In this document: positions 3,001 to 40,500 of the stretch, piece after piece
Layout of the letters: each line of letters begins with the position of its first letter
Numbering within the stretch: the stretch's first letter is position 1
DNA from: Macrostomum lignano
Lineage: Eukaryota
Direction of reading: 5' to 3'
NCBI GenBank assembly: GCA_002269645.1
Contig: NIVC01004558.1
Coordinates: 1-42,046, forward strand
DNA: 42,046 bases
Program-made: the position numbers and the translations under genes
Notes under the pieces: model-generated
Database searches by the model: none
What the model was told of the DNA's origin: nothing
What the model saw: only the letters and a program-made list of their open reading frames with translations

Positions 3001-6000
3001 TAGATTAGCAATCCATTCTATTCCTGCATCCATGATAGGCTAGATTAGCAATCCATTCTATTCCTGCATCCATGATAGGCTAGATTAGCAATCCATTCTA
3101 TTCCTGCATCCATGATAGGCTAGATTAGCAATCCATTCTATTCCTGCATCCATGATAGGCTAGATTAGCAATCCATTCTATTCCTGCATCCATGATAGGC
3201 TAGATTAGCAATCCATTCTATTCCTGCATCCATGATAGGCTAGATTAGCAATCCATTCTATTCCTGCATCCATGATAGGCTAGATTAGCAATCCATTCTA
3301 TTCCTGCATCCATGATAGGCTAGATTAGCAATCCATTCTATTCCTGCATCCATGATAGGCTAGATTAGCAATCCATTCTATTCCTGCATCCATGATAGGC
3401 TAGATTAGCAATCCATTCTATTCCTGCATCCATGATAGGCTAGATTAGCAATCCATTCTATTCCTGCATCCATGATAGGCTAGATTAGCAATCCATTCTA
3501 TTCCTGCATCCATGATAGGCTAGATTAGCAATCCATTCTATTCCTGCATCCATGATAGGCTAGATTAGCAATCCATTCTATTCCTGCATCCCATGATAGG
3601 CTAGATTAGCAATCCATTCTATTCCTGCATCCATGATAGGCTAGATTAGCAATCCATTCTATTCCTGCATCCATGATAGGCTAGATTAGCAATCCATTCT
3701 ATTCCTGCATCCATGATAGGCTAGATTAGCAATCCATTCTATTCCTGCATCCATGATAGGCTAGATTAGCAATCCATTCTATTCCTGCATCCATGATAGG
3801 CTAGATTAGCAATCCATTCTATTCCTGCATCCATGATAGGCTAGATTAGCAATCCATTCTATTCCTGCATCCATGATAGGCTAGATTAGCAATCCATTCT
3901 ATTCCTGCATCCATGATAGGCTAGATTAGCAATCCATTCTATTCCTGCATCCATGATAGGCTAGATTAGCAATCCATTCTATTCCTGCATCCATGATAGG
4001 CTAGATTAGCAATCCATTCTATTCCTGCATCCATGATAGGCTAGATTAGCAATCCATTCTATTCCTGCATCCATGATAGGCTAGATTAGCAATCCATTCT
4101 ATTCCTGCATCCATGATAGGCTAGATTAGCAATCCATTCTATTCCTGCATCCATGATAGGCTAGATTAGCAATCCATTCTATTCCTGCATCCATGATAGG
4201 CTAGATTAGCAATCCATTCTATTCCTGCATCCATGATAGGCTAGATTAGCAATCCATTCTATTCCTGCATCCATGATAGGCTAGATTAGCAATCCATTCT
4301 ATTCCTGCATCCATGATAGGCTAGATTAGCAATCCATTCTATTCCTGCATCCATGATAGGCTAGATTAGCAATCCATTCTATTCCTGCATCCATGATAGG
4401 CTAGATTAGCAATCCATTCTATTCCTGCATCCATGATAGGCTAGATTAGCAATCCATTCTATTCCTGCATCCATGATAGGCTAGATTAGCAATCCATTCT
4501 ATTCCTGCATCCATGATAGGCTAGATTAGCAATCCATTCTATTCCTGCATCCATGATAGGCTAGATTAGCAATCCATTCTATTCCTGCATCCATGATAGG
4601 CTAGATTAGCAATCCATTCTATTCCTGCATCCATGATAGGCTAGATTAGCAATCCATTCTATTCCTGCATCCATGATAGGCTAGATTAGCAATCCATTCT
4701 ATTCCTGCATCCATGATAGGCTAGATTAGCAATCCATTCTATTCCTGCATCCATGATAGGCTAGATTAGCAATCCATTCTATTCCTGCATCCATGATAGG
4801 CTAGATTAGCAATCCATTCTATTCCTGCATCCATGATAGGCTAGATTAGCAATCCATTCTATTCCTGCATCCATGATAGGCTAGATTAGCAATCCATTCT
4901 ATTCCTGCATCCATGATAGGCTAGATTAGCAATCCATTCTATTCCTGCATCCATGATAGGCTAGATTAGCAATCCATTCTATTCCTGCATCCATGATAGG
5001 CTAGATTAGCAATCCATTCTATTCCTGCATCCATGATAGGCTAGATTAGCAATCCATTCTATTCCTGCATCCATGATAGGCTAGATTAGCAATCCATTCT
5101 ATTCCTGCATCCATGATAGGCTAGATTAGCAATCCATTCTATTCCTGCATCCATGATAGGCTAGATTAGCAATCCATTCTATTCCTGCATCCATGATAGG
5201 CTAGATTAGCAATCCATTCTATTCCTGCATCCATGATAGGCTAGATTAGCAATCCATTCTATTCCTGCATCCATGATAGGCTAGATTAGCAATCCATTCT
5301 ATTCCTGCATCCATGATAGGCTAGATTAGCAATCCATTCTATTCCTGCATCCATGATAGGCTAGATTAGCAATCCATTCTATTCCTGCATCCATGATAGG
5401 CTAGATTAGCAATCCATTCTATTCCTGCATCCATGATAGGCTAGATTAGCAATCCATTCTATTCCTGCATCCATGATAGGCTAGATTAGCAATCCATTCT
5501 ATTCCTGCATCCATGATAGGCTAGATTAGCAATCCATTCTATTCCTGCATCCATGATAGGCTAGATTAGCAATCCATTCTATTCCTGCATCCATGATAGG
5601 CTAGATTAGCAATCCATTCTATTCCTGCATCCATGATAGGCTAGATTAGCAATCCATTCTATTCCTGCATCCATGATAGGCTAGATTAGCAATCCATTCT
5701 ATTCCTGCATCCATGATAGGCTAGATTAGCAATCCATTCTATTCCTGCATCCATGATAGGCTAGATTAGCAATCCATTCTATTCCTGCATCCATGATAGG
5801 CTAGATTAGCAATCCATTCTATTCCTGCATCCATGATAGGCTAGATTAGCAATCCATTCTATTCCTGCATCCATGATAGGCTAGATTAGCAATCCATTCT
5901 ATTCCTGCATCCATGATAGGCTAGATTAGCAATCCATTCTATTCCTGCATCCATGATAGGCTAGATTAGCAATCCATTCTATTCCTGCATCCATGATAGG

Positions 6001-9000
6001 CTAGATTAGCAATCCATTCTATTCCTGCATCCATGATAGGCTAGATTAGCAATCCATTCTATTCCTGCATCCATGATAGGCTAGATTAGCAATCCATTCT
6101 ATTCCTGCATCCATGATAGGCTAGATTAGCAATCCATTCTATTCCTGCATCCATGATAGGCTAGATTAGCAATCCATTCTATTCCTGCATCCATGATAGG
6201 CTAGATTAGCAATCCATTCTATTCCTGCATCCATGATAGGCTAGATTAGCAATCCATTCTATTCCTGCATCCATGATAGGCTAGATTAGCAATCCATTCT
6301 ATTCCTGCATCCATGATAGGCTAGATTAGCAATCCATTCTATTCCTGCATCCATGATAGGCTAGATTAGCAATCCATTCTATTCCTGCATCCATGATAGG
6401 CTAGATTAGCAATCCATTCTATTCCTGCATCCATGATAGGCTAGATTAGCAATCCATTCTATTCCTGCATCCATGATAGGCTAGATTAGCAATCCATTCT
6501 ATTCCTGCATCCATGATAGGCTAGATTAGCAATCCATTCTATTCCTGCATCCATGATAGGCTAGATTAGCAATCCATTCTATTCCTGCATCCATGATAGG
6601 CTAGATTAGCAATCCATTCTATTCCTGCATCCATGATAGGCTAGATTAGCAATCCATTCTATTCCTGCATCCATGATAGGCTAGATTAGCAATCCATTCT
6701 ATTCCTGCATCCATGATAGGCTAGATTAGCAATCCATTCTATTCCTGCATCCATGATAGGCTAGATTAGCAATCCATTCTATTCCTGCATCCATGATAGG
6801 CTAGATTAGCAATCCATTCTATTCCTGCATCCATGATAGGCTAGATTAGCAATCCATTCTATTCCTGCATCCATGATAGGCTAGATTAGCAATCCATTCT
6901 ATTCCTGCATCCATGATAGGCTAGATTAGCAATCCATTCTATTCCTGCATCCATGATAGGCTAGATTAGCAATCCATTCTATTCCTGCATCCATGATAGG
7001 CTAGATTAGCAATCCATTCTATTCCTGCATCCATGATAGGCTAGATTAGCAATCCATTCTATTCCTGCATCCATGATAGGCTAGATTAGCAATCCATTCT
7101 ATTCCTGCATCCATGATAGGCTAGATTAGCAATCCATTCTATTCCTGCATCCATGATAGGCTAGATTAGCAATCCATTCTATTCCTGCATCCATGATAGG
7201 CTAGATTAGCAATCCATTCTATTCCTGCATCCATGATAGGCTAGATTAGCAATCCATTCTATTCCTGCATCCATGATAGGCTAGATTAGCAATCCATTCT
7301 ATTCCTGCATCCATGATAGGCTAGATTAGCAATCCATTCTATTCCTGCATCCATGATAGGCTAGATTAGCAATCCATTCTATTCCTGCATCCATGATAGG
7401 CTAGATTAGCAATCCATTCTATTCCTGCATCCATGATAGGCTAGATTAGCAATCCATTCTATTCCTGCATCCATGATAGGCTAGATTAGCAATCCATTCT
7501 ATTCCTGCATCCATGATAGGCTAGATTAGCAATCCATTCTATTCCTGCATCCATGATAGGCTAGATTAGCAATCCATTCTATTCCTGCATCCATGATAGG
7601 CTAGATTAGCAATCCATTCTATTCCTGCATCCATGATAGGCTAGATTAGCAATCCATTCTATTCCTGCATCCATGATAGGCTAGATTAGCAATCCATTCT
7701 ATTCCTGCATCCATGATAGGCTAGATTAGCAATCCATTCTATTCCTGCATCCATGATAGGCTAGATTAGCAATCCATTCTATTCCTGCATCCATGATAGG
7801 CTAGATTAGCAATCCATTCTATTCCTGCATCCATGATAGGCTAGATTAGCAATCCATTCTATTCCTGCATCCATGATAGGCTAGATTAGCAATCCATTCT
7901 ATTCCTGCATCCATGATAGGCTAGATTAGCAATCCATTCTATTCCTGCATCCATGATAGGCTAGATTAGCAATCCATTCTATTCCTGCATCCATGATAGG
8001 CTAGATTAGCAATCCATTCTATTCCTGCATCCATGATAGGCTAGATTAGCAATCCATTCTATTCCTGCATCCATGATAGGCTAGATTAGCAATCCATTCT
8101 ATTCCTGCATCCATGATAGGCTAGATTAGCAATCCATTCTATTCCTGCATCCATGATAGGCTAGATTAGCAATCCATTCTATTCCTGCATCCATGATAGG
8201 CTAGATTAGCAATCCATTCTATTCCTGCATCCATGATAGGCTAGATTAGCAATCCATTCTATTCCTGCATCCATGATAGGCTAGATTAGCAATCCATTCT
8301 ATTCCTGCATCCATGATAGGCTAGATTAGCAATCCATTCTATTCCTGCATCCATGATAGGCTAGATTAGCAATCCATTCTATTCCTGCATCCATGATAGG
8401 CTAGATTAGCAATCCATTCTATTCCTGCATCCATGATAGGCTAGATTAGCAATCCATTCTATTCCTGCATCCATGATAGGCTAGATTAGCAATCCATTCT
8501 ATTCCTGCATCCATGATAGGCTAGATTAGCAATCCATTCTATTCCTGCATCCATGATAGGCTAGATTAGCAATCCATTCTATTCCTGCATCCATGATAGG
8601 CTAGATTAGCAATCCATTCTATTCCTGCATCCATGATAGGCTAGATTAGCAATCCATTCTATTCCTGCATCCATGATAGGCTAGATTAGCAATCCATTCT
8701 ATTCCTGCATCCATGATAGGCTAGATTAGCAATCCATTCTATTCCTGCATCCATGATAGGCTAGATTAGCAATCCATTCTATTCCTGCATCCATGATAGG
8801 CTAGATTAGCAATCCATTCTATTCCTGCATCCATGATAGGCTAGATTAGCAATCCATTCTATTCCTGCATCCATGATAGGCTAGATTAGCAATCCATTCT
8901 ATTCCTGCATCCATGATAGGCTAGATTAGCAATCCATTCTATTCCTGCATCCATGATAGGCTAGATTAGCAATCCATTCTATTCCTGCATCCATGATAGG

Positions 9001-12000
9001 CTAGATTAGCAATCCATTCTATTCCTGCATCCATGATAGGCTAGATTAGCAATCCATTCTATTCCTGCATCCATGATAGGCTAGATTAGCAATCCATTCT
9101 ATTCCTGCATCCATGATAGGCTAGATTAGCAATCCATTCTATTCCTGCATCCATGATAGGCTAGATTAGCAATCCATTCTATTCCTGCATCCATGATAGG
9201 CTAGATTAGCAATCCATTCTATTCCTGCATCCATGATAGGCTAGATTAGCAATCCATTCTATTCCTGCATCCATGATAGGCTAGATTAGCAATCCATTCT
9301 ATTCCTGCATCCATGATAGGCTAGATTAGCAATCCATTCTATTCCTGCATCCATGATAGGCTAGATTAGCAATCCATTCTATTCCTGCATCCATGATAGG
9401 CTAGATTAGCAATCCATTCTATTCCTGCATCCATGATAGGCTAGATTAGCAATCCATTCTATTCCTGCATCCATGATAGGCTAGATTAGCAATCCATTCT
9501 ATTCCTGCATCCATGATAGGCTAGATTAGCAATCCATTCTATTCCTGCATCCATGATAGGCTAGATTAGCAATCCATTCTATTCCTGCATCCATGATAGG
9601 CTAGATTAGCAATCCATTCTATTCCTGCATCCATGATAGGCTAGATTAGCAATCCATTCTATTCCTGCATCCATGATAGGCTAGATTAGCAATCCATTCT
9701 ATTCCTGCATCCATGATAGGCTAGATTAGCAATCCATTCTATTCCTGCATCCATGATAGGCTAGATTAGCAATCCATTCTATTCCTGCATCCATGATAGG
9801 CTAGATTAGCAATCCATTCTATTCCTGCATCCATGATAGGCTAGATTAGCAATCCATTCTATTCCTGCATCCATGATAGGCTAGATTAGCAATCCATTAT
9901 ATTCCTGCATCCATGATAGGCTAGATTAGCAATCCATTCTATTCCTGCATCCATGATAGGCTAGATTAGCAATCCATTCTATTCCTGCATCCATGATAGG
10001 CTAGATTAGCAATCCATTCTATTCCTGCACCATGATAGGCTAGATTAGCAATCCATTCTATTCCTGCATCCATGATAGGCTAGATTAGCAATCCATTCTA
10101 TTCCTGCATCCATGATAGGCTAGATTAGCAATCCATTCTATTCCTGCATCCATGATAGGCTAGATTAGCAATCCATTCTATTCCTGCATCCATGATAGGC
10201 TAGATTAGCAATCCATTCTATTCCTGCATCCATGATAGGCTAGATTAGCAATCCATTCTATTCCTGCATCCATGATAGGCTAGATTAGCAATCCATTCTA
10301 TTCCTGCATCCATGATAGGCTAGATTAGCAATCCATTCTATTCCTGCATCCATGATAGGCTAGATTAGCAATCCATTCTATTCCTGCATCCATGATAGGC
10401 TAGATTAGCAATCCATTCTATTCCTGCATCCATGATAGGCTAGATTAGCAATCCATTCTATTCCTGCATCCATGATAGGCTAGATTAGCAATCCATTCTA
10501 TTCCTGCATCCATGATAGGCTAGATTAGCAATCCATTCTATTCCTGCATCCATGATAGGCTAGATTAGCAATCCATTCTATTCCTGCATCCATGATAGGC
10601 TAGATTAGCAATCCATTCTATTCCTGCATCCATGATAGGCTAGATTAGCAATCCATTCTATTCCTGCATCCATGATAGGCTAGATTAGCAATCCATTCTA
10701 TTCCTGCATCCATGATAGGCTAGATTAGCAATCCATTCTATTCCTGCATCCATGATAGGCTAGATTAGCAATCCATTCTATTCCTGCATCCATGATAGGC
10801 TAGATTAGCAATCCATTCTATTCCTGCATCCATGATAGGCTAGATTAGCAATCCATTCTATTCCTGCATCCATGATAGGCTAGATTAGCAATCCATTCTA
10901 TTCCTGCATCCATGATAGGCTAGATTAGCAATCCATTCTATTCCTGCATCCATGATAGGCTAGATTAGCAATCCATTCTATTCCTGCATCCATGATAGGC
11001 TAGATTAGCAATCCATTCTATTCCTGCATCCATGATAGGCTAGATTAGCAATCCATTCTATTCCTGCATCCATGATAGGCTAGATTAGCAATCCATTCTA
11101 TTCCTGCATCCATGATAGGCTAGATTAGCAATCCATTCTATTCCTGCATCCATGATAGGCTAGATTAGCAATCCATTCTATTCCTGCATCCATGATAGGC
11201 TAGATTAGCAATCCATTCTATTCCTGCATCCATGATAGGCTAGATTAGCAATCCATTCTATTCCTGCATCCATGATAGGCTAGATTAGCAATCCATTCTA
11301 TTCCTGCATCCATGATAGGCTAGATTAGCAATCCATTCTATTCCTGCATCCATGATAGGCTAGATTAGCAATCCATTCTATTCCTGCATCCATGATAGGC
11401 TAGATTAGCAATCCATTCTATTCCTGCATCCATGATAGGCTAGATTAGCAATCCATTCTATTCCTGCATCCATGATAGGCTAGATTAGCAATCCATTCTA
11501 TTCCTGCATCCATGATAGGCTAGATTAGCAATCCATTCTATTCCTGCATCCATGATAGGCTAGATTAGCAATCCATTCTATTCCTGCATCCATGATAGGC
11601 TAGATTAGCAATCCATTCTATTCCTGCATCCATGATAGGCTAGATTAGCAATCCATTCTATTCCTGCATCCATGATAGGCTAGATTAGCAATCCATTCTA
11701 TTCCTGCATCCATGATAGGCTAGATTAGCAATCCATTCTATTCCTGCATCCATGATAGGCTAGATTAGCAATCCATTCTATTCCTGCATCCATGATAGGC
11801 TAGATTAGCAATCCATTCTATTCCTGCATCCATGATAGGCTAGATTAGCAATCCATTCTATTCCTGCATCCATGATAGGCTAGATTAGCAATCCATTCTA
11901 TTCCTGCATCCATGATAGGCTAGATTAGCAATCCATTCTATTCCTGCATCCATGATAGGCTAGATTAGCAATCCATTCTATTCCTGCATCCATGATAGGC

Positions 12001-13171
12001 TAGATTAGCAATCCATTCTATTCCTGCATCCATGATAGGCTAGATTAGCAATCCATTCTATTCCTGCATCCATGATAGGCTAGATTAGCAATCCATTCTA
12101 TTCCTGCATCCATGATAGGCTAGATTAGCAATCCATTCTATTCCTGCATCCATGATAGGCTAGATTAGCAATCCATTCTATTCCTGCATCCATGATAGGC
12201 TAGATTAGCAATCCATTCTATTCCTGCATCCATGATAGGCTAGATTAGCAATCCATTCTATTCCTGCATCCATGATAGGCTAGATTAGCAATCCATTCTA
12301 TTCCTGCATCCATGATAGGCTAGATTAGCAATCCATTCTATTCCTGCATCCATGATAGGCTAGATTAGCAATCCATTCTATTCCTGCATCCATGATAGGC
12401 TAGATTAGCAATCCATTCTATTCCTGCATCCATGATAGGCTAGATTAGCAATCCATTCTATTCCTGCATCCATGATAGGCTAGATTAGCAATCCATTCTA
12501 TTCCTGCATCCATGATAGGCTAGATTAGCAATCCATTCTATTCCTGCATCCATGATAGGCTAGATTAGCAATCCATTCTATTCCTGCATCCATGATAGGC
12601 TAGATTAGCAATCCATTCTATTCCTGCATCCATGATAGGCTAGATTAGCAATCCATTCTATTCCTGCATCCATGATAGGCTAGATTAGCAATCCATTCTA
12701 TTCCTGCATCCATGATAGGCTAGATTAGCAATCCATTCTATTCCTGCATCCATGATAGGCTAGATTAGCAATCCATTCTATTCCTGCATCCATGATAGGC
12801 TAGATTAGCAATCCATTCTATTCCTGCATCCATGATAGGCTAGATTAGCAATCCATTCTATTCCTGCATCCATGATAGGCTAGATTAGCAATCCATTCTA
12901 TTCCTGCATCCATGATAGGCTAGATTAGCAATCCATTCTATTCCTGCATCCATGATAGGCTAGATTAGCAATCCATTCTATTCCTGCATCCATGATAGGC
13001 TAGATTAGCAATCCATTCTATTCCTGCATCCATGATAGGCTAGATTAGCAATCCATTCTATTCCTGCATCCATGATAGGCTAGATTAGCAATCCATTCTA
13101 TTCCTGCATCCATGATAGGCTAGATTAGCAATCCATTCGGTTCCTGCATCCATGATAGGCTAGATTAGCAA
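1..13171 (+). repeat. 40-bp tandem satellite, left part of the array (about 329 monomers; continues beyond the window start)
   Basis: Monomer ctattcctgcatccatgataggctagattagcaatccatt repeated head-to-tail. There are scattered indels in the first ~1.3 kb. From 3.6 to 13.1 kb it is almost invariant (variants seen only at ~9899, ~10030 and 13139-13140). It ends at ...tagattagcaa (13171). Confidence 0.99.
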
Positions 13172-13697
13172 TCTTCTATCTAATGTGGCTGTTGTGTGAT
13201 CGTGTTTGTGCAATGTGGCTGATTAGCCCATTTTCTTCGAACCTGCACTGTTCGATCAGAAATTATTCCGTGACGGTACATGCATCGTGGCTAAGAAATT
13301 GCTCGATGCTAAAAGGATTAAATATTCGAAAAACATGCTTTTTTGCAAAGGTCAAGCAGCTCTTTCAACTTGAAAGGCGTTGTAAGAATGCTAGAGAAAA
13401 AACTGACTGGTTTAATTCTGATTCTGAAATAGATTGCATCACAATAGGCTTTTTATTTATTGTCTGTGTACTGGCTGAATTTTGACACTCAATTGAAATG
13501 CGTCACAAGATTGAGTGTGGAAGCATAGCACAATACTTGATTTATATTGCTTAACCACAATGCTAACTTTAATAGAGACTGGTACTGACTTGCCTAAAAA
13601 ATTGATTATGTCATAACTGCTTTGTGTAACTTTTACTCAATTGACTTGGTGTGAGTGTTGAATTATATAAGTGCTACAAATTCATTTATAACTTCAA

Positions 13698-13768
13698 TTA
13701 GAGCTAGCCTAGAGCTGAATAGACTGGATTGCTAATGCAGCGACCAGGGTTCGAATCTAAGTAGTGTA
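13698..13768 (+). pseudogene. Degenerate tRNA-Ser(GCT)-like sequence / tRNA-derived SINE head (Pol III A and B boxes)
   Basis: A-box-like TAGCCTAG at 13705 (tRNA position 8). Anticodon arm ctgga-TTGCTAA-tgcag at 13724-13740 with GCT at 13731-13733, exactly 26 nt after position 8. B-box GGTTCGAATC at 13748-13757. The acceptor, D and T stems pair poorly and there is no long Ser variable arm, so it is not a functional tRNA. Confidence 0.55.
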
Positions 13769-13830
13769 AAAGTAGTAATGTAATTTTTTTATTGAAAGCT
13801 TTTATTAAAAGACTAATTAAAAACCTTTAG

Positions 13831-15413
13831 ATCACCGTGTTTGATAAACCAGGGATTACTGCACTTGATTAGCCAAGGATTACTGCACTTGATAAACCAA
13901 GGATTATTGCTCTTAATAAACCAAGGATTACTGCACTTGATAAACCAAGGATTATTGCACTTGCAAACCAAGGATTACTGCTCTTAATAAGCCAAGGATT
14001 ATTTCTCATAATAAGCTAAGGATTATTTCGCTTAATAGGCCAAGGATTACTGCACTTGATAAACCTACTGCACTTGATAAACCAAGGATTACTGCGCTTG
14101 GCAAATCAAGGATTACTGCACTTGATAGGCAAAGGATTACTGCACTCGATAAACCAAGAATTTTTGCTCTTAATAAACCAAGGATTACTGCACTTGATAA
14201 ACCAAGGATTATTGCACTTGATAAACCAAGGATTATTGCTCTTAATAAGCCAAGGATTACTGCACTTGATAAACCAAGGATTATTGCTCGTAATAAACCA
14301 AAGATTACTGCACTTGATAAACCAATGATTATTGCTCTTAATAAACCAAGGATTACTGCGCTTGATAAGCCAAGGATTACTGAACTTGATAAGCCAAGAA
14401 TTATCGCTCTAAATAAGCTAAGGATAATTGCTCTCAATAAACCAAGGATTACTGCACTTGATAAACCAAAGATTATAGCACTTGATAAACCCAGGATTAT
14501 TGCTCTTTATAAGCCAAGGATAATTGCTCTTAATAAGCTAAGGATTTTTGCACTTGGCAAACCAAGGATTACTGCACTTGATAAACCTACTGCACTTGAT
14601 AAACCTACTGCACTTGATAAACCAAGGATTACCGCTCTTAACAAGCTAAGGATTATTGCACTTGGCAAACCAAGGATTACTGCTCCTAATAAGCCAAGGA
14701 TTATTGCTCTTAATAAGCTAAGGATTTTTGTACTTGGCAAACCAAGGATTACTGCACTTGATAAACCAAGACAAATCGCTCTTGATAAGCCAAGGATTAT
14801 TGCTCTTGATAAACCAAGGATTATTGCTCTTAATAAACCAAGGATTACTGCGCTTGATAGGCAAAGGATTACTGCACTTGATAAACCAAGAATTATCGTT
14901 CTTAATAAGCTAAGGATTATTGCACTTGATAAACCAAGGATTATTGCTCTTAATAAGCTAAGGGTAATTTCACTTGGCAAACCAAGGATTACTGCTCCTA
15001 ATAAGCCAAGGATTATTGCTCTTAATAAGCTAAGGATTTTTGTACTTAGCAAACCAAGGATTACTGCACTTGATAAACCAAGGATTATTGCTCTTAATAA
15101 ACCAAGGATTACTGCGCTTGATAAGCCAAGGATTACTGCGCTTGATAAGCCAAGGATTATTGCACTTGGCAAACCTAGGATTACTGCACTCGATAAACCA
15201 AGGATTACTGCACTTGATAAACCAAGACATATCGCTCTTAATAAGCCAAGGATTATTGCACTTGGCAAACCTAGGATTACTGCACTCGATAAACCAAGGA
15301 TTACTGCACTTGATAAACCAAGGATAACTGCACTTGATAAGCAAAGGATTATTGCTCTTGATAAGCCAAGGATTATTGCACTTAGCAAACCAAGGATTAC
15401 AGCACTTGATAAG
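13831..15413 (+). repeat. 24-bp minisatellite inside the Helitron (about 66 units; consensus gataaaccaaggattactgcactt)
   Basis: Clear 24-bp period with subtypes (gca ctt gat / gct ctt aat / gca ctt ggc), 18-bp units lacking aggatt, and internal higher-order duplications (gctcctaat at 14682 and 14994, offset 312; cctagg..ctcgat units offset 96). Confidence 0.97.
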
Positions 15414-15767
15414 CTTGGCTACATGTATGGGATTCTTTCTATCCAGGGATGCTTGCTATTCAGGGATTCTTGCTATCTGCAGGATGCTTGCTATCTGGGT
15501 GGATGCTTCTACAGTATCTTGCGATGCTTGCTATGTGCAGGTTGCTTGCTATCTGGGGTGAAGCTTGCTACGTGTACTAAGGGATGCTTGCTATCTGTTG
15601 TTGCTTACTTTTGGAGGGGGGTGCTTGCTATCTGGAGGGATACTTGCTGTCTTGGGAATATTTTCTATTTAGGTGGAATGTCTGTTATTTTTGTGAAAGC
15701 TATATTTTGTTGTCGGTTTGTTAATTTTAGAAAAAAAGAGATTCATAGCAAATATCATTGTCCGTGA
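14325..15767 (+). CDS. Possible octapeptide-repeat ORF (KPRITALD/KPRIIALN); the frame is stop-free from 13944. It may simply be a non-coding repeat.
   Basis: 480-aa ORF in the track; by hand the same frame is open back to 13944. Much variation falls at third codon positions (gca/gct/gcg, aaa/aag, agg/aga, cca/cct/ccc, att/ata/atc) and internal deletions are 6 bp. Against: the ATG arises from an agg>atg change in one repeat, there is a TAG at 13870-13872 and a 1-bp shift at ~13963, and a 24-bp unit without a stop gives a long ORF by default. Confidence 0.25.
   Translation: MIIALNKPRITALDKPRITELDKPRIIALNKLRIIALNKPRITALDKPKIIALDKPRIIALYKPRIIALNKLRIFALGKPRITALDKPTALDKPTALDKPRITALNKLRIIALGKPRITAPNKPRIIALNKLRIFVLGKPRITALDKPRQIALDKPRIIALDKPRIIALNKPRITALDRQRITALDKPRIIVLNKLRIIALDKPRIIALNKLRVISLGKPRITAPNKPRIIALNKLRIFVLSKPRITALDKPRIIALNKPRITALDKPRITALDKPRIIALGKPRITALDKPRITALDKPRHIALNKPRIIALGKPRITALDKPRITALDKPRITALDKQRIIALDKPRIIALSKPRITALDKLGYMYGILSIQGCLLFRDSCYLQDACYLGGCFYSILRCLLCAGCLLSGVKLATCTKGCLLSVVAYFWRGVLAIWRDTCCLGNIFYLGGMSVIFVKAIFCCRFVNFRKKEIHSKYHCP
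15411..15652 (+). repeat. Degenerate 17-19-bp tandem repeat (core ggatgcttgctatctg)
   Basis: About a dozen imperfect copies, e.g. gggatgcttgctattca, ggatgcttgctatctgggt, gggatgcttgctatctgtt, gggtgcttgctatctgga. Confidence 0.75.
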
Positions 15768-16022
15768 CAATTTTACATGAATAAGGTGATTTTTAAAAGT
15801 GAAGAAGGAATTGGTGTTTAACACCAGTGATGCCTCTGCATGATAGGCAACTGTGTTGCCTTTGGGTAACAATATTTTTTGCTGTAGCTGCTTTTCCAGC
15901 CATTGCCGAGCGTACTGCTTGCACCGCTACAGAAGTAGTACGCTATTGCTTTGAAAGAAGGCAAGTATGGTTGAATTGTCAGTTCTACACAAGCATGTTT
16001 TATTAGCACATAAGCCCCAGAA

Positions 16023-16076
16023 TTAAAATGAGAATTCGATTCCTAGCCCCCCTCCCTAAGAATTCTTTCATTTTAA
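16023..16076. repeat. Subterminal inverted repeat near the Helitron 3' end
   Basis: ttaaaatgagaattc (16023-16037) pairs with gaattc-tt-tcattttaa (16060-16076): 15 bp with a 2-nt bulge and a 22-nt loop. Confidence 0.6.
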
Positions 16077-16098
16077 AGGATTCGTCCCTTGCTTATTG

Positions 16099-16129
16099 GC
16101 CACCCCGAAGGGGGGCGCTAGATTGCTAG
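16099..16129 (+). other. Helitron 3' terminator: GC hairpin plus terminal CTAG
   Basis: gccacccc GAA ggggggc (a perfect palindrome if one T is restored) followed by gctagattg and CTAG|T. Confidence 0.8.
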
Positions 16130-19100
16130 TCCATTCTATTCCTGCATCCATGATAGGCTAGATTAGCAATCCATTCTATTCCTGCACCCATGATAGGCTA
16201 GATTAGCAATCCATTCTATTCCTGCAGCCATGATAGGCTAGATTAGCAATCCATTCTATTCTTGCACCCATGATAGGCTAGATTAGCAATGCATTCTATT
16301 CCTGCACCCATGATAGGCTAGATTAGCAATCCATTCTATTCCTGCATCCATGATAGGCTAGATTAGCAATCCATTCTATTCTTGCACCCATGATAGGCTA
16401 GATTAGCAACCCATTCTATTCCTGCATCCATGATAGGCTAGATTAGCAATCCATTCTATTCTTGCACCCATGATAGGCTAGATTAGCAATCCATTCTATT
16501 CCTGCATCCATGATAGGCTAGATTAGCAATCCATTCTATTCCTACACCCATGATAGGCTAGATTAGCAATCCATTCTATTCCTGCACCCATGATAGGCTA
16601 GATTAGCAATCCATTCTATTCCTGCATCCATGATAGGCTACATTAGCAATCCGCTCTATTTCTGCAGCCATGATAGGCTAGATTAGCAATCCATTCTATT
16701 CCTGCAGCCATGATAGGCTAGATTAGCAATCCATTCTATTCCTGCACCCATTATAGGCTAGATTAGCAATGCATTCTATTCCTGCACCCATGATAGGCCA
16801 GATTAGCAATCCATTCTATTCCTGCACCCATGATAGGCTAGATTAGCAATCCATTCTATTCCTACACCCATGATAGGCTAGATTAGCAATCCATTCTATT
16901 CCTGCATCCATGATAGGCTAGATTAGCAATCCATTCTATTCCTACACCCATGATAGGCTAGATTAGCAATCCATTCTATTCCTGCATCCATGATAGGCTA
17001 GATTAGCAATCCATTCTATTCCTACACCCATGATAGGCTAGATTAGCAATCCATTCTATTCCTGCAGCCATGATAGGCTAGATTAGCAATCCATTCTATT
17101 CCTGCACCCATTATAGGCTAGATTAGCAATGCATTCTATTCCTGCACCCATGATAGGCCAGATTAGCAATCCATTCTATTCCTGCACCCATGATAGGCTA
17201 GATTAGCAATCCATTCTATTCCTACACCCATGATAGGCTAGATTAGCAATCCATTCTATTCCTGCATCCATGATAGGCTAGATTAGCAATCCATTCTATT
17301 CCTACACCCATGATAGGCTAGATTAGCAATCCATTCTATTCCTGCATCCATGATAGGCTAGATTAGCAATCCATTCTATTCCTACACCATGATAGGCTAG
17401 ATTAGCAATCCATTCTATTCCTGCATCCATGATAGGCTAGATTAGCAATCCATTCTATTCCTGCATCCATGATAGGCTAGATTAGCAATCCATTCTATTC
17501 TGCACCCATGATAGGCTAGATTAGCAATCCATTCTATTCCTGCATCCATGATAGGCTAGATTAGCAATCCATTCTATTCCTGCATCCATGATAGGCTAGA
17601 TTAGCAATCCATTCTATTCCTGCATCCATGATAGGCTAGATTAGCAATCCATTCTATTCCTACACCCATGATAGGCTAGATTAGCAATCCATTCTATTCC
17701 TGCATCCATGATAGGCTAGATTAGCAATCCATTCTATTCCTACACCCATGATAGGCTAGATTAGCAATCCATTCTATTCCTGCATCCATGATAGGCTAGA
17801 TTAGCAATCCATTCTATTCCTGCATCCATGATAGGCTAGATTAGCAATCCATTCTATTCCTGCACCCATGATAGGCTAGATTAGCAATCCATTCTATTCC
17901 TGCATCCATGATAGGCTAGATTAGCAATCCATTCTATTCCTGCATCCATGATAGGCTAGATTAGCAATCCATTCTATTCCTGCACCATGATAGGCTAGAT
18001 TAGCAATCCATTCTATTCCTGCATCCATGATAGGCTAGATTAGCAATCCATTCTATTCCTGCACCCATGATAGGCTAGATTAGCAATCCATTCTATTCCT
18101 GCATCCATGATAGGCTAGATTAGCAATCCATTCTATTCCTGCATCCATGATAGGCTAGATTAGCAATCCATTCTATTCCTGCACCCATGATAGGCTAGAT
18201 TAGCAATCCATTCTATTCCTGCATCCATGATAGGCTAGATTAGCAATCCATTCTATTCCTGCACCATGATAGGCTAGATTAGCAATCCATTCTATTCCTG
18301 CATCCATGATAGGCTAGATTAGCAATCCATTCTATTCCTGCACCCATGATAGGCTAGATTAGCAATCCATTCTATTCCTGCATCCATGATAGGCTAGATT
18401 AGCAATCCATTCTATTCCTACACCCATGATAGGCTAGATTAGCAATCCATTCTATTCCTGCACCCATGATAGGCTAGATTAGCAATCCATTCTATTCCTG
18501 CATCCATGATAGGCTAGATTAGCAATCCATTCTATTTCTGCAGCCATGATAGGCTAGATTAGCAATCCATTCTATTCCTGCAGCCATGATAGGCTAGATT
18601 AGCAATCCATTCTATTCCTGCACCATGATAGGCTAGATTAGCAATCCATTCTATTCCTGCACCCATGATAGGCTAGATTAGCAATCCATTCTATTCCTGC
18701 ACCATGATAGGCTAGATTAGCAATCCATTCTATTCCTGCACCATGATAGGCTAGATTAGCAATCCATTCTATTCCTGCATCCATGATAGGCTAGATTAGC
18801 AATCCATTCTATTCCTACACCATGATAGGCTAGATTAGCAATCCATTCTATTCCTGCATCCGTGATTGGCTAGATTAGCAATCCATTCTATTCCTGCATC
18901 CATGATAGGCTAGATTAGCAATCCATTCTATTCCTGCACCATGATAGGCTAGATTAGCAATCCATTCTATTCCTGCATCCATGATAGGCTAGATTAGCAA
19001 TCCATTCTATTCCTGCATCCATGATAGGCTAGATTAGCAATCCATTCTATTCCTGCATCCATGATAGGCTAGATTAGCAATCCATTCTATTCCTGCACCA

Positions 19101-22100
19101 TGATAGGCTAGATTAGCAATCCATTCTATTCCTGCATCCATGATAGGCTAGATTAGCAATCCATTCTATTCCTGCACCATGATAGGCTAGATTAGCAATC
19201 CATTCTATTCCTGCATCCATGATAGGCTAGATTAGCAATCCATTCTATTCCTGCACCATGATAGGCTAGATTAGCAATCCATTCTATTCCTGCATCCATG
19301 ATAGGCTAGATTAGCAATCCATTCTATTCCTGCATCCATGATAGGCTAGATTAGCAATCCATTCTATTCCTGCATCCATGATAGGCTAGATTAGCAATCC
19401 ATTCTATTCCTGCACCATGATAGGCTAGATTAGCAATCCATTCTATTCCTGCATCCATGATAGGCTAGATTAGCAATCCATTCTATTCCTGCATCCATGA
19501 TAGGCTAGATTAGCAATCCATTCTATTCCTGCATCCATGATAGGCTAGATTAGCAATCCATTCTATTCCTGCATCCATGATAGGCTAGATTAGCAATCCA
19601 TTCTATTCCTGCACCCATGATAGGCTAGATTAGCAATCCATTCTATTCCTGCATCCATGATAGGCTAGATTAGCAATCCATTCTATTCCTGCACCCATGA
19701 TAGGCTAGATTAGCAATCCATGATCGGCTGGATTAGCAATCCATTCTATTCCTGCACCCATGATAGGCTAGATTAGCAATCCATTCTATTCCTGCATCCA
19801 TGATAGGCTAGATTAGCAATCCATTCTATTCCTGCATCCATGATAGGCTAGATTATCAATCCATGATAGGCTAGATTAGCAATCCATTCTATTCCTACAC
19901 CCATGATAGGCTAGATTAGCAATCCATTCTATTCCTGCATCCATGATAGGCTAGATTAGCAATCCATTCTATTCCTGCACCCATGATAGGCTAGATTAGC
20001 AATCCATTCTATTCCTGCATCCATGATAGGCTAGATTAGCAATCCATTCTATTCCTGCATCCATGATAGGCTAGATTAGCAATCCATTCTATTCCTGCAT
20101 CCATGATAGGCTAGATTAGCAATCCATTCTATTCCTGCACCATGATAGGCTAGATTAGCAATCCATTCTATTCCTGCATCCATGATAGGCTAGATTAGCA
20201 ATCCATTCTATTCCTGCACCATGATAGGCTAGATTAGCAATCCATGATCGCTGGATTAGCAATCCATTCTATTCCTGCACCCATGATAGGCTAGATTAGC
20301 AATCCATTCTATTCCTGCATCCATGATAGGCTAGATTAGCAATCCATTCTATTCCTGCACCATGATAGGCTAGATTAGCAATCCATGATCGGCTGATTAG
20401 CAATCCATTCTATTCCTGCACCCATGATAGGCTAGATTAGCAATCCATTCTATTCCTGCATCCATGATAGGCTAGATTAGCAATCCATTCTATTCCTGCA
20501 TCCATGATAGGCTAGATTAGCAATCCATTCTATTCCTGCATCCATGATAGGCTAGATTAGCAATCCATTCTATTCCTGCATCCATGATAGGCTAGATTAG
20601 CAATCCATTCTATTCCTGCACCATGATAGGCTAGATTAGCAATCCATTCTATTCCTGCATCCATGATAGGCTAGATTAGCAATCCATTCTATTCCTGCAT
20701 CATGATAGGCTAGATTAGCAATCCATGATCGGCTGGATTAGCAATCCATTCTATTCCTGCATCCATGATAGGCTAGATTAGCAATCCATTCTATTCCTAC
20801 ACCCATGATAGGCTAGATTAGCAATCCATTCTATTCCTGCATCCATGATAGGCTAGATTAGCAATCCATTCTATTCCTGCACCATGATAGGCTAGATTAG
20901 CAATCCATTCTATTCCTGCACCATGATAGGCTAGATTAGCAATCCATTCTATTCCTGCATCCATGATAGGCTAGATTAGCAATCCATTCTATTCCTGCAC
21001 CCATGATAGGCTAGATTAGCAATCCATTCTATTCCTGCATCCATGATAGGCTAGATTAGCAATCCATTCTATTCCTGCACCCATGATAGGCTAGATTAGC
21101 AATCCATTCTATTCCTGCATCCATGATAGGCTAGATTAGCAATCCATTCTATTCCTGCATCCATGATAGGCTAGATTAGCAATCCATTCTATTCCTGCAC
21201 CATGATAGGCTAGATTAGCAATCCATTCTATTCCTGCATCCATGATAGGCTAGATTAGCAATCCATTCTATTCCTGCATCCATGATAGGCTAGATTAGCA
21301 ATCCATTCTATTCCTGCATCCATGATAGGCTAGATTAGCAATCCATTCTATTCCTGCACCCATGATAGGCTAGATTAGCAATCCATTCTATTCCTGCATC
21401 CATGATAGGCTAGATTAGCAATCCATTCTATTCCTGCACCATGATAGGCTAGATTAGCAATCCATTCTATTCCTGCATCCATGATAGGCTAGATTAGCAA
21501 TCCATTCTATTCCTGCATCCATGATAGGCTAGATTAGCAATCCATTCTATTCCTGCATCCATGATAGGCTAGATTAGCAATCCATTCTATTCCTGCATCC
21601 ATGATAGGCTAGATTAGCAATCCATTCTATTCCTGCATCCATGATAGGCTAGATTAGCAATCCATTCTATTCCTGCATCCATGATAGGCTAGATTAGCAA
21701 TCCATTCTATTCCTGCATCCATGATAGGCTAGATTAGCAATCCATTCTATTCCTGCATCCATGATAGGCTAGATTAGCAATCCATTCTATTCCTGCATCC
21801 ATGATAGGCTAGATTAGCAATCCATTCTATTCCTGCATCCATGATAGGCTAGATTAGCAATCCATTCTATTCCTGCATCCATGATAGGCTAGATTAGCAA
21901 TCCATTCTATTCCTGCATCCATGATAGGCTAGATTAGCAATCCATTCTATTCCTGCATCCATGATAGGCTAGATTAGCAATCCATTCTATTCCTGCATCC
22001 ATGATAGGCTAGATTAGCAATCCATTCTATTCCTGCATCCATGATAGGCTAGATTAGCAATCCATTCTATTCCTGCACCATGATAGGCTAGATTAGCAAT

Positions 22101-25100
22101 CCATTCTATTCCTGCATCCATGATAGGCTAGATTAGCAATCCATTCTATTCCTGCATCCATGATAGGCTAGATTAGCAATCCATTCTATTCCTGCATCCA
22201 TGATAGGCTAGATTAGCAATCCATTCTATTCCTGCATCCATGATAGGCTAGATTAGCAATCCATTCTATTCCTGCACCATGATAGGCTAGATTAGCAATC
22301 CATTCTATTCCTGCATCCATGATAGGCTAGATTAGCAATCCATTCTATTCCTGCACCATGATAGGCTAGATTAGCAATCCATTCTATTCCTGCATCCATG
22401 ATAGGCTAGATTAGCAATCCATTCTATTCCTGCATCCATGATAGGCTAGATTAGCAATCCATTCTATTCCTGCATCCATGATAGGCTAGATTAGCAATCC
22501 ATTCTATTCCTGCATCCATGATAGGCTAGATTAGCAATCCATTCTATTCCTGCATCCATGATAGGCTAGATTAGCAATCCATTCTATTCCTGCACCATGA
22601 TAGGCTAGATTAGCAATCCATTCTATTCCTGCATCCATGATAGGCTAGATTAGCAATCCATTCTATTCCTGCATCCATGATAGGCTAGATTAGCAATCCA
22701 TTCTATTCCTGCATCCATGATAGGCTAGATTAGCAATCCATTCTATTCCTGCATCCATGATAGGCTAGATTAGCAATCCATTCTATTCCTGCATCCATGA
22801 TAGGCTAGATTAGCAATCCATTCTATTCCTGCATCCATGATAGGCTAGATTAGCAATCCATTCTATTCCTGCATCCATGATAGGCTAGATTAGCAATCCA
22901 TTCTATTCCTGCATCCATGATAGGCTAGATTAGCAATCCATTCTATTCCTGCATCCATGATAGGCTAGATTAGCAATCCATTCTATTCCTGCATCCATGA
23001 TAGGCTAGATTAGCAATCCATTCTATTCCTGCATCCATGATAGGCTAGATTAGCAATCCATTCTATTCCTGCACCATGATAGGCTAGATTAGCAATCCAT
23101 TCTATTCCTGCATCCATGATAGGCTAGATTAGCAATCCATTCTATTCCTGCATCCATGATAGGCTAGATTAGCAATCCATTCTATTCCTGCATCCATGAT
23201 AGGCTAGATTAGCAATCCATTCTATTCCTGCATCCATGATAGGCTAGATTAGCAATCCATTCTATTCCTGCATCCATGATAGGCTAGATTAGCAATCCAT
23301 TCTATTCCTGCACCATGATAGGCTAGATTAGCAATCCATTCTATTCCTGCATCCATGATAGGCTAGATTAGCAATCCATTCTATTCCTGCACCATGATAG
23401 GCTAGATTAGCAATCCATTCTATTCCTGCATCCATGATAGGCTAGATTAGCAATCCATTCTATTCCTGCATCCATGATAGGCTAGATTAGCAATCCATTC
23501 TATTCCTGCATCCATGATAGGCTAGATTAGCAATCCATTCTATTCCTGCATCCATGATAGGCTAGATTAGCAATCCATTCTATTCCTGCATCCATGATAG
23601 GCTAGATTAGCAATCCATTCTATTCCTGCATCCATGATAGGCTAGATTAGCAATCCATTCTATTCCTGCATCCATGATAGGCTAGATTAGCAATCCATTC
23701 TATTCCTGCATCCATGATAGGCTAGATTAGCAATCCATTCTATTCCTGCATCCATGATAGGCTAGATTAGCAATCCATTCTATTCCTGCATCCATGATAG
23801 GCTAGATTAGCAATCCATTCTATTCCTGCATCCATGATAGGCTAGATTAGCAATCCATTCTATTCCTGCACCATGATAGGCTAGATTAGCAATCCATTCT
23901 ATTCCTGCATCCATGATAGGCTAGATTAGCAATCCATTCTATTCCTGCATCCATGATAGGCTAGATTAGCAATCCATGATCGGCTGGATTAGCAATCCAT
24001 TCTATTCCTGCACCCATGATAGGCTAGATTAGCAATCCATTCTATTCCTGCATCCATGATAGGCTAGATTAGCAATCCATTCTATTCCTGCATCCATGAT
24101 AGGCTAGATTAGCAATCCATGATAGGCTAGATTAGCAATCCATTCTATTCCTACACCCATGATAGGCTAGATTAGCAATCCATTCTATTCCTGCATCCAT
24201 GATAGGCTAGATTAGCAATCCATTCTATTCCTGCATCCATGATAGGCTAGATTAGCAATCCATTCTATTCCTGCATCCATGATAGGCTAGATTAGCAATC
24301 CATTCTATTCCTGCACCATGATAGGCTAGATTAGCAATCCATTCTATTCCTGCATCCATGATAGGCTAGATTAGCAATCCATTCTATTCCTGCACCCATG
24401 ATAGGCTAGATTAGCAATCCATTCTATTCCTGCATCCATGATAGGCTAGATTAGCAATCCATTCTATTCCTGCATCCATGATAGGCTAGATTAGCAATCC
24501 ATGATCGGCTGATTAGCAATCCATTCTATTCCTGCACCATGATAGGCTAGATTAGCAATCCATTCTATTCCTGCATCCATGATAGGCTAGATTAGCAATC
24601 CATTCTATTCCTGCACCATGATAGGCTAGATTAGCAATCCATGATCGGCTATTAGCAATCCATTCTATTCCTGCACCATGATAGGCTAGATTAGCAATCC
24701 ATTCTATTCCTGCATCCATGATAGGCTAGATTAGCAATCCATTCTATTCCTGCATCCATGATAGGCTAGATTAGCAATCCATTCTATTCCTGCATCCATG
24801 ATAGGCTAGATTAGCAATCCATTCTATTCCTGCATCCATGATAGGCTAGATTAGCAATCCATTCTATTCCTGCACCATGATAGGCTAGATTAGCAATCCA
24901 TTCTATTCCTGCATCCATGATAGGCTAGATTAGCAATCCATTCTATTCCTGCATCCATGATAGGCTAGATTAGCAATCCATGATCGGCTAGATTAGCAAT
25001 CCATTCTATTCCTGCATCCATGATAGGCTAGATTAGCAATCCATTCTATTCCTGCATCCATGATAGGCTAGATTAGCAATCCATTCTATTCCTGCATCCA

Positions 25101-39193: not shown

Positions 39194-39251
39194 TGAAACT
39201 GCTGTGCAATGATCACTAAAATGAATATTTGAGGTCCCCAGAGCCCCAGCC

Positions 39252-39880: not shown

Positions 39881-39925
39881 GCTGGCGGTGTCGGCTTCTA
39901 GCCAGAAGAGATTCCCAAAGTCTGG

Positions 39926-40480: not shown

Positions 40481-40500
40481 TGTCCGGTGGAGGGGGGCTC

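What the first reader, a model, noticed from the sequence alone, without database searches (positions are those of the whole stretch)
13172..16129. A Helitron inserted cleanly into a 36-kb satellite: the two arrays are one
Seen: the unique block begins TC and ends hairpin + CTAG. It sits exactly at gcaA|Tcc of a monomer, and removing it restores a perfect 40-mer with no duplication or loss. Established: TC...CTRR termini, a subterminal hairpin, A|T insertion and no TSD define Helitrons. Inference: this is a 2,958-bp non-autonomous Helitron family that no ORF-based annotation would show. It carries captured or accessory cargo (a tRNA-like head, two tandem repeats) and may be undescribed.
Basis: partly seen in the sequence, partly recalled or inferred. 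Interest (0 to 1): 0.85.

Follow-up and report, generated by a model that had tools for sequence, protein, structure and literature searches.

The report
Helitron-like insert splitting a 40-bp satellite
A 2,958-bp non-coding block sits inside a 36-kb satellite array, probably of a Macrostomum flatworm, and has all the end features of a non-autonomous Helitron transposon; this is an ordinary kind of event, and I could not test whether the block is a repeated family.

Summary
A 40-bp satellite fills 1-13171 and 16130-39191. The block 13172-16129 lies at gcaA|Tcc, and deleting its 2,958 bp restores monomer and phase exactly. It starts with TC and ends with CTAG. The strongest hairpin in the whole block lies 13 nt from its 3' end. 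It has no terminal inverted repeats and no recognisable coding sequence. It carries a 24-bp tandem array (66 copies) and a degenerate 17-18-bp array.

So every sequence-level hallmark of a canonical Helitron is met. CTRR plus a hairpin this strong occurs at 2 of 11,386 control positions.

Four qualifications apply:
- The TC is also what the satellite would have at that point, so the boundary can slide by 2 nt.
- The last 13 nt (GCTAGATTGCTAG) match the target monomer in phase at 9 of 13 positions, 8 of them contiguous. A degenerate 13-bp target duplication is therefore not excluded.
- The "tRNA-like head" fails ARAGORN and Rfam. It is a diverged inverted satellite monomer next to a B-box-like 10-mer.
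- The two arrays differ sharply in variant content.

Copy number, an autonomous partner and empty sites could not be tested, because the organism is absent from the searchable DNA collections. Helitrons between satellite arrays are already described. Verdict: a plausible new member of a known kind, of modest interest.

The parts
1..13171 (+). Left part of the 40-bp satellite array. It is very homogeneous: 304 of 328 monomers are identical to TCCATTCTATTCCTGCATCCATGATAGGCTAGATTAGCAA. It runs off the left end of the window.
   Evidence: TRF; monomer census; phase
13172..16129 (+). Inserted 2,958-bp non-coding block, the candidate non-autonomous Helitron. It lies between A13171 and T16130.
   Evidence: exact restoration of the monomer; no Pfam hit in ORFs of the arms
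13172..13173 (+). 5'-terminal TC. It is identical to the next two satellite bases (16130-16131), so the boundary is ambiguous by up to 2 nt.
13172..13840 (+). Unique AT-rich 5' arm (669 bp).
   Evidence: its 100-aa ORF has no homologue
13699..13745 (-). Diverged inverted copy of about one satellite monomer. The core 13717-13741 matches the reverse-complement monomer at 22 of 25 positions.
   Evidence: I1-I3; 0 of 300 shuffles reach the score
13748..13757 (+). GGTTCGAATC, a 10-mer resembling a tRNA B box. It is the only tRNA-like feature; no tRNA fold is detected.
13841..15412 (+). 24-bp tandem repeat, 66.3 copies, consensus TTGATAAACCAAGGATTACTGCAC, 78% matches. Two short 18-bp sub-arrays at 14048-14083 and 14570-14623 repeat part of the 24-bp unit.
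   Evidence: TRF
15429..15650 (+). Degenerate 17-18-bp repeat with core GATGCTTGCTAT: 9 copies at irregular spacing.
15661..16129 (+). Unique 3' arm (469 bp).
16099..16116 (+). Subterminal GC-rich hairpin: 7 bp with one bulge and a GAA loop. It ends 13 nt from the 3' end and 9 nt before the terminal CTAG.
   Evidence: (rank 1 of 2,935 windows)
16117..16129 (+). 3'-terminal 13-mer GCTAGATTGCTAG, ending in CTAG. It matches the target-monomer sequence GCTAGATTAGCAA in phase at 9 of 13 positions. It is either the Helitron right end or a degenerate target duplication.
16130..39191 (+). Right part of the same satellite, in the same orientation and phase. It is variant-rich for 2-3 kb next to the block and contains clusters of 23-nt short monomers.

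Best explanation
The block 13172-16129 is a single copy of a non-autonomous canonical Helitron. It inserted by rolling-circle, single-strand transfer between A and T of one monomer (GCAA|TCC) of a pre-existing 40-bp satellite array, without a target-site duplication.

Shown:
- The insertion is precise and restores the monomer.
- TC and CTAG termini are present.
- The strongest hairpin of the block lies 13 nt from the 3' end.
- There are no terminal inverted repeats and no coding capacity.
- The cargo consists of two internal minisatellites and one diverged inverted satellite monomer.

Inferred:
- A RepHel transposase encoded elsewhere in the genome nicked at the 5' TC, used the hairpin plus CTAG as the terminator, and joined the strand into the A|T site.
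- The inverted monomer and the satellite-like 3' end are traces of earlier residence in, or capture from, this satellite.
- After insertion the block acted as a barrier, so the two half-arrays were homogenised separately. The left half is almost pure consensus. The right half has an 'array-edge' spectrum of variants.
For: - Exact phase and monomer restoration. A random misjoin or double junction would do this about 1 time in 40.
- Termini and flanks read directly. These match the definition in PMC6591975 and PMC4778049: 5'-TC, CTRR-3' (mostly CTAG), a 16-20-nt GC-rich hairpin 10-15 nt upstream of the 3' end, an AT target, and no terminal inverted repeats.
- The hairpin is the best of 2,935 windows.
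- In 11,386 control positions of non-satellite sequence from this window, CTRR with a hairpin of <=-10 kcal/mol 4-20 nt upstream occurs 8 times, and with <=-12 kcal/mol twice.
- AT dinucleotides make up 7 of the 40 positions in the monomer (read from the sequence).
- No inverted repeat joins the two ends, apart from satellite-derived ones.
- No Pfam domain is found in the ORFs of the arms.
- Non-autonomous Helitrons of 1.5-3.5 kb that carry minisatellites and sit between satellite arrays are documented in Meloidogyne (PMC13404089). Tandem-repeat-carrying relatives are documented in oyster (PMC7492417).
Against: - Only one copy is visible, so nothing shows mobility or a family.
- No other copy of the 3' terminus or the 24-bp unit turned up in the DNA collections, and ORF translations of the 5' arm and the 24-bp array found no protein relatives. 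These negatives carry no weight, because the satellite itself is absent from all three DNA collections too.
- The 5' TC coincides with the satellite's own TC.
- The last 13 nt resemble the 13 nt of target just upstream of the insertion point, in phase (9 of 13; a run of 8 occurs at 1 of 11,494 control positions). A canonical Helitron does not predict this, and it looks like a decayed target duplication.
- The hairpin's energy is not exceptional against shuffles of the same G/C-run-rich 45-mer (z = -0.91).
Confidence: 0.5

Rival explanations
1. The inserted DNA is 13172-16116 (2,945 bp) and is flanked by a 13-bp target-site duplication: GCTAGATTAGCAA on the left and GCTAGATTGCTAG on the right. 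The right copy was later altered: the 3-nt loop of the satellite's GATT-AGC-AATC palindrome was inverted (AGC to GCT), and one A changed to G. The element would then belong to a class that makes staggered cuts, such as a retroelement or an unknown DNA element. The terminal CTAG would be an accident of that mutation.
For: The in-phase match of 9 of 13, with 8 contiguous, is rare by chance. Removing the element plus one copy of the duplication gives the same 2,958-bp deletion and the same phase restoration. The 16120-16128 stretch is also a 9-bp inverted copy of 13166-13174 (I5; read from the sequence), consistent with palindrome-mediated rearrangement.
Against: Four of the five junction-proximal bases differ, while neighbouring monomers are at least 97% consensus. 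No GATTGCTAG variant exists anywhere else in about 900 monomers. There is no poly-A or short-repeat tail, no terminal inverted repeats, and no tRNA or Pol III head at the 5' end. No known class is therefore matched, and the coincidence of TC, A|T, CTAG and the hairpin is left unexplained.
Confidence: 0.15
2. The block is not a transposon. It is a piece of ordinary genomic DNA captured during repair of a double-strand break in the satellite, by end joining with 2-nt TC microhomology. The Helitron-like ends are coincidental.
For: There is 2-nt microhomology at the junction. Only one copy is seen. The block looks like ordinary minisatellite-rich non-coding DNA, like the window's tail at 39927-42046.
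Against: The capture lost no base from the target. CTAG plus the strongest hairpin at the canonical distance has a joint frequency of about 0.02-0.07% in control sequence. The site is A|T. This model also leaves the in-phase 3' similarity unexplained. The block has no similarity to the tail.
Confidence: 0.15
3. The satellite and the block share an origin. The 40-bp monomer is a collapsed left-end plus right-end unit, or another derivative, of this element family. The array would be a rolling-circle or unequal-exchange concatemer in which one unit keeps the 2.9-kb interior. Alternatively, the element homes to sites that resemble its own right end.
For: In the frame set by the junction, the monomer starts with TC and is preceded by A. 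The block's 3' 13-mer resembles the monomer's end in phase. Its first 8 nt are the monomer's first 10 nt minus CA. The block also holds an inverted monomer-like segment. Helitron head-to-tail junctions and tandem Helitron arrays are known (PMC4778049, PMC7492417).
Against: The 5' similarity is not significant (403 of 11,506 control positions). The monomer ends in GCAA, not CTRR, and has no hairpin. The similarity covers only about 20 of 40 nt. No second case is available to test the idea.
Confidence: 0.1
4. The block is an assembly artefact: a chimeric join or a mis-placed read inside a collapsed satellite.
For: The left array is suspiciously uniform. The right array has many 1-nt length variants (95 monomers of 39 nt), as in error-prone long-read assemblies.
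Against: Two independent false joins would restore the monomer to the base only about 1 time in 40, and would not place an A|TC...CTAG|T signature there. The 39-nt variants alternate regularly with 40-nt ones, which suggests real higher-order structure.
Confidence: 0.05

Closest known systems
Canonical non-autonomous Helitrons, such as the HelibatN families and the Helraiser model (PMC4778049), as defined in PMC6591975
   Same: 5'-TC and CTAG-3' termini. A GC-rich subterminal hairpin of 18 nt, 13 nt from the end here, against a 19-bp palindrome 11 nt from the end in Helraiser. An A|T target, no terminal inverted repeats, no RepHel ORF, and foreign or repetitive cargo.
   Different: Only one copy is known here. 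The 3' terminal 13 nt resemble the target. No autonomous partner is identified. The host appears to be a flatworm, and my literature searches found no description of a Helitron family in Macrostomum.
Non-autonomous Helitron 'intermediate sequences' between centromeric satellite arrays in mitotic Meloidogyne (PMC13404089), and TCR1/Tyba in Rhynchospora as cited there
   Same: An element of 1.5-3.5 kb lying between arrays of a short satellite, with minisatellite-like repeats inside and hairpin plus CTAG features at the 3' side.
   Different: There the elements recur many times and alternate with arrays in higher-order units, alongside autonomous copies. Here there is a single interruption of one 36-kb array, and no centromere evidence.
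Helentron-derived HINEs: DINE-1 in Drosophila and Cg_HINE in Crassostrea gigas (PMC7492417)
   Same: Non-coding, with two arms around a central tandem-repeat array, a 3' palindrome, and no target duplication.
   Different: HINEs have 11-12-bp subterminal inverted repeats and insert at TT. Neither feature is found here.
tRNA-derived SINEs
   Same: A B-box-like GGTTCGAATC and a nearby hairpin (13724-13747).
   Different: No tRNA fold by ARAGORN or Rfam. The motif is internal, not at the 5' end. There is no A-rich or repeat tail, and the length is 3 kb.

Membership tests
Helitron (canonical) | 5' terminus TC joined to a host A | tested here: met
   A13171|TC13172-13173. Weakened because the satellite also has TC at this point (16130-16131), so the boundary can slide 0-2 nt.
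Helitron (canonical) | 3' terminus CTRR joined to a host T | tested here: met
   CTAG at 16126-16129, followed by T16130. CTRR occurs at 136 of 11,386 control positions.
Helitron (canonical) | GC-rich hairpin of 16-20 nt, 10-15 nt upstream of the 3' end | tested here: met
   16099-16116: 18 nt, 7 bp plus a bulge, 13 nt from the end. It is the strongest of 2,935 windows in the block. With CTRR at this strength it occurs at 2 of 11,386 control positions.
Helitron (canonical) | No target-site duplication | tested here: inconclusive
   Deleting 13172-16129 restores the monomer exactly. But the last 13 nt match the 13 nt left of the insertion at 9 of 13 positions, in phase. This could be a decayed 13-bp duplication.
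Helitron (canonical) | No terminal inverted repeats | tested here: met
   No inverted repeat between the first and last roughly 100 nt, other than satellite-derived ones. The nearest is a pair of 26-nt arms, 73% complementary, lying about 130-160 nt inside each end.
Helitron (canonical) | Empty site: the same flank without the element | tested here: met
   Paralogous only: about 900 uninterrupted monomers read GCAA|TCC. Allelic or orthologous empty sites were not testable.
Helitron (canonical) | Several copies sharing both termini in different flanks | not testable with these tools
   The source genome is not available. The 3' end, the satellite and the 24-mer gave zero hits in the viral, metagenome and prokaryote contig collections. 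The organism is simply absent there. ORF-based protein searches found nothing.
Helitron (canonical) | An autonomous RepHel element with matching termini in the same genome | not testable with these tools
   There is no RepHel in the window and no Pfam hit in ORFs of the block's arms. No genome was available to search.
Helentron / HINE | Subterminal inverted repeats of 11-12 bp near both ends | tested here: not met
Helentron / HINE | Insertion between T and T | tested here: not met
   The three possible boundary placements give A|T, T|C or C|C.
Helentron / HINE | Central tandem-repeat array and a 3' palindrome | tested here: met
tRNA-derived SINE | A tRNA-related 5' head | tested here: not met
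   ARAGORN finds 0 genes. No Rfam tRNA match at E<=10. The motif lies 577 nt from the 5' end.
tRNA-derived SINE | A 3' A-rich or short-repeat tail plus a target duplication | tested here: not met
   The 3' end is a GC hairpin plus GCTAGATTGCTAG, with no tail.

The most novel reading that the evidence does not exclude
The element and the satellite are evolutionarily coupled. Either the 40-bp monomer descends from sequence carried by this Helitron-like family (the inverted monomer in the 5' arm, or a collapsed right-end/left-end junction), or the element homes to monomer sites that mimic its own right end. In either case a Helitron family would both seed and re-invade its own satellite in a flatworm genome.
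Probability: 0.1. Interest if true: 0.6.

Novelty: new member of a known kind. Interest (0 to 1): 0.3.

Why it matters
If confirmed, this would be a clean, base-exact example of a non-autonomous Helitron in a flatworm satellite, probably Macrostomum. My literature searches found no Helitron family described for that genus. It would also serve as a dated marker splitting one array into two halves that have since evolved differently: 24 of 25 consensus monomers on one side against 5 of 25 on the other. That is a natural experiment on how an interruption blocks satellite homogenisation. It would also add to the growing link between Helitrons and satellite or centromeric arrays. By itself, a transposon inside a satellite is routine.

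Tried and rejected
- Exact-pattern scans for the 3' terminus (viral and metagenome contigs), the satellite 28-mer (prokaryote genome, viral and metagenome contigs) and the 24-bp repeat (viral contigs) all returned zero hits. The satellite control shows the organism is not in these collections, so the negatives say nothing about copy number.
- I ran protein-level searches with ORFs translated from the 5' arm and from the 24-bp array, hoping that other copies had been called as ORFs. They found nothing.
- Exact-protein contig look-ups for the tail ORF and its Macrostomum relative found nothing on record.
- A literature search for the monomer sequence gave 0 papers.
- tRNA-like head: rejected. 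Folding 13695-13772 gives z = -1.31, which is not significant.
- Similarity between the block and the array's right flank (39192-42046), including the two minisatellite families that look alike by eye, is at chance level.
- Similarity of the 24-bp unit and of several short stretches in the arms to the satellite gave E-values of 0.17-24 in a tiny search space, so these are not significant. Only the inverted 25-mer is significant.
- Rfam matches inside the block (ST7-OT4_2, mir-7957 and others) are all far below their gathering scores, so they are chance.
- Vector or plasmid origin: no blastn match.
- Helentron/HINE and SINE membership: defining features were tested and not met.
Full report
**What is there**

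The window is eukaryotic repeat DNA. TRF reports one 40-bp satellite (consensus CTATTCCTGCATCCATGATAGGCTAGATTAGCAATCCATT) from 1 to 39191, about 967 copies. It is interrupted by a block whose composition differs from the satellite (GC skew near 0 instead of -0.25).

The sequence at the two junctions reads ...GGCTAGATTAGCAA|TCTTCTATCTAATG... and ...GGCCACCCCGAAGGGGGGCGCTAGATTGCTAG|TCCATTCTATTCC.... A k-mer phase map gives phase 17 up to 13160 and phase 15 from 16130. The block is 2,958 bp, which is 38 mod 40, so deleting it restores the phase exactly. The joined flanks match the consensus at 157 of 160 positions, with no mismatch at the junction. The satellite totals 13,171 + 23,062 = 36.2 kb. 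The core observation is therefore correct, and the roughly 900 intact monomers act as paralogous empty sites.

**Anatomy of the block**

- 13172-13840: unique AT-rich 5' arm.
- 13841-15412: 24-bp tandem repeat, 66 copies.
- 15429 to about 15650: nine irregularly spaced copies of a GATGCTTGCTAT core.
- 15661-16129: unique 3' arm.

ORFs in the arms have no Pfam domain, and the 100-aa ORF of the 5' arm has no homologue. The long ORFs are translations of the 24-bp repeat and have no homologue either. No inverted repeat links the two ends, apart from ones caused by the satellite's own GATT-AGC-AATC palindrome.

**Helitron hallmarks**

The definitions in PMC6591975 and PMC4778049 are:
- 5'-TC and CTRR-3' (mostly CTAG) termini;
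- a 16-20-nt GC-rich hairpin 10-15 nt from the 3' end;
- insertion between A and T;
- no terminal inverted repeats and no target duplication.

The block reads A|TC...CTAG|T. The hairpin at 16099-16116 has 7 bp plus one bulge and a GAA loop. It ends 13 nt from the 3' end and is the single most stable 24-nt window of 2,935 in the block (-12.4 kcal/mol against a mean of -1.7).

As a control I used 11,386 positions of this window's own non-satellite DNA, on both strands. CTRR occurs 136 times. CTRR with a hairpin of <=-10 kcal/mol 4-20 nt upstream occurs 8 times, and with <=-12 kcal/mol twice. Allowing also for a 1-in-16 TC start, the 7 of 40 A|T sites in the monomer, and a factor of 3 for boundary ambiguity, a chance origin of the full signature is of the order of 1e-5. 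This figure is my arithmetic and the sequence. Only the + orientation fits.

1. The first two bases of the block (TC) equal the next two bases of the satellite. The insert can therefore be placed at three positions, and the 5' TC is not independent evidence.
2. The last 13 nt, GCTAGATTGCTAG, line up in phase with the 13 nt of monomer that precede the insertion point (GCTAGATTAGCAA): 9 of 13 identical, 8 of them contiguous. In control sequence, 9 or more of 13 occurs at 26 of 11,494 positions, and a run of 8 or more at 1 of 11,494. This is not chance. It can be read in three ways:
   - as an intrinsic Helitron right end that happens to resemble the target, or targets sites like itself;
   - as satellite sequence captured at a former residence, given that end bypass creates new 3' ends (PMC4778049);
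   - as a decayed 13-bp target duplication. The difference AGCAA to GCTAG equals an inversion of the palindrome's 3-nt loop plus one substitution. In that case the element would be 13172-16116 and would not be a Helitron.
   
   No other monomer carries GATTGCTAG. The similarity of the block's first 8 nt to the satellite (TC--TTCTAT) is not significant (403 of 11,506 control positions).
3. The "tRNA-like head" fails every test. ARAGORN finds nothing. Rfam finds no tRNA at E<=10 in 3.1 kb, or in a 141-nt query with lax filters. The fold is unremarkable (z = -1.3). The region also lies about 530-590 nt inside the block. What it really contains is a diverged, inverted copy of about one satellite monomer. 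The core 13717-13741 matches at 22 of 25 positions, and 0 of 300 dinucleotide shuffles reach its score. This is followed by a B-box-like GGTTCGAATC.
4. "The two arrays are one" is true for monomer, orientation and phase, but the halves differ. Of the 25 monomers adjacent to the block, 24 on the left are exact consensus against 5 on the right; for 100 monomers the figures are 97 and 44. The right side begins with variants (C, D, F, J, K, O, P). Variants D and K in particular are concentrated next to the block and at the true array edge at 38455-39191.

**Search for other copies**

This is the decisive test, and I could not perform it. Exact scans for the 3' terminus, the 24-bp unit and the satellite returned nothing in the viral, metagenome and prokaryote contig collections. 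Because the satellite itself is absent, these negatives carry no weight. ORF-based protein searches and exact-protein look-ups were also empty.

**Organism**

A GC-rich minus-strand ORF in the tail (39467-39880) matches one protein in 1.8 billion representatives. That protein is UniRef A0A1I8FL96 from Macrostomum lignano, at 60% identity. A second frame matches the same protein in patches. This indicates DNA-level homology with indels, so the window is probably from a Macrostomum flatworm: either a paralogous locus of M. lignano or a congener. My literature searches found no description of Helitrons or of this satellite in Macrostomum.

**Interpretation**

The best explanation is a non-autonomous canonical Helitron that inserted once into an existing array and has since separated two independently homogenised half-arrays (confidence 0.5). 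The rivals are:
- an element of another class with a decayed 13-bp target duplication (0.15);
- capture of non-mobile DNA during break repair with 2-nt microhomology (0.15);
- common origin or homing between the satellite and the element (0.10);
- misassembly (0.05).

The misassembly rival is disfavoured because two false joins would not restore a monomer to the base.

**Comparison with known systems**

The closest are canonical non-autonomous Helitrons. In terms of organisation, the closest are the 1.5-3.5-kb non-autonomous Helitron "intermediate sequences" between centromeric arrays of Meloidogyne, which also carry minisatellites and 3' hairpin/CTAG features (PMC13404089). Helentron-type HINEs of oyster and Drosophila share the arm / tandem repeat / arm layout, but they require subterminal inverted repeats and TT targets (PMC7492417). 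Both features were tested here and are not met. SINE membership also fails.

**Verdict**

If true, it is a new member of a known kind. Interest is modest (0.3). The only less ordinary lead is the sequence relationship between the element and the satellite it sits in: the 3' end and the internal inverted monomer.

Noticed in passing
window 16130-39191: The right array contains 27 short 23-nt monomers (TCCATGAT...AGCAA). Each is a 17-nt deletion between TCCAT direct repeats, giving 62-63-bp units. They cluster at about 19.7-20.7, 24.0-25.0, 27.4-28.6, 31.7-32.5 and 35.2-36.9 kb, so the clusters recur every 3.5-4.3 kb. This suggests kilobase-scale segmental amplification inside the array. None occurs in the left array at 1300-13171.
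   Followed up: partly
window 1227-13171 versus 16130-19000: Homogeneity around the block is strongly asymmetric. The left side is almost pure consensus up to the last monomer, which alone carries a unique CT-to-GG change at 13139-13140. The right side starts with 2-3 kb of diverged variants, including a repeated FOPCDADA pattern, resembling a true array edge.
   Followed up: partly
window 39230-39890, minus strand: This is a GC-rich stretch (about 63%) directly after the satellite edge. It has two overlapping-frame ORFs (39467-39880 and 39252-39698). Both match Macrostomum lignano UniRef A0A1I8FL96 (annotated as a TGF_BETA_2 domain-containing protein, probably a fused gene model) at about 57-60% identity, in patches. 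It looks like a small two-transmembrane-segment protein exon with a frameshift relative to that model. Pfam gives only weak hits to DUF2157 and Neurensin.
   Followed up: partly
window 39927-40696 and 41193-42046: Two further minisatellites lie in the array's right flank: a 21-bp unit TGGGGATTCTCCTATTCTCGG (37 copies) and a 22-bp unit CAGTGGGAATGAACAGGAGAGG (40 copies, running off the window). By eye the 21-bp unit resembles the block's GGGATTCTTGCTATC repeat, but the similarity is at chance level.
   Followed up: yes
window 18000-38000: 95 monomers are 39 nt long (GCACCATG instead of GCATCCATG or GCACCCATG). They often alternate regularly with 40-nt monomers (ABABAB). This suggests a real 79-bp dimer rather than homopolymer sequencing error, though the latter is not excluded.
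   Followed up: no
window 13330-13340 and 15991-16001: There is a perfect 11-bp inverted repeat, AAAACATGCTT / AAGCATGTTTT, lying 158 nt and 128 nt inside the two ends of the block. It is too far from the ends to count as a HINE-type subterminal repeat, and it is borderline by chance (I4).
   Followed up: no
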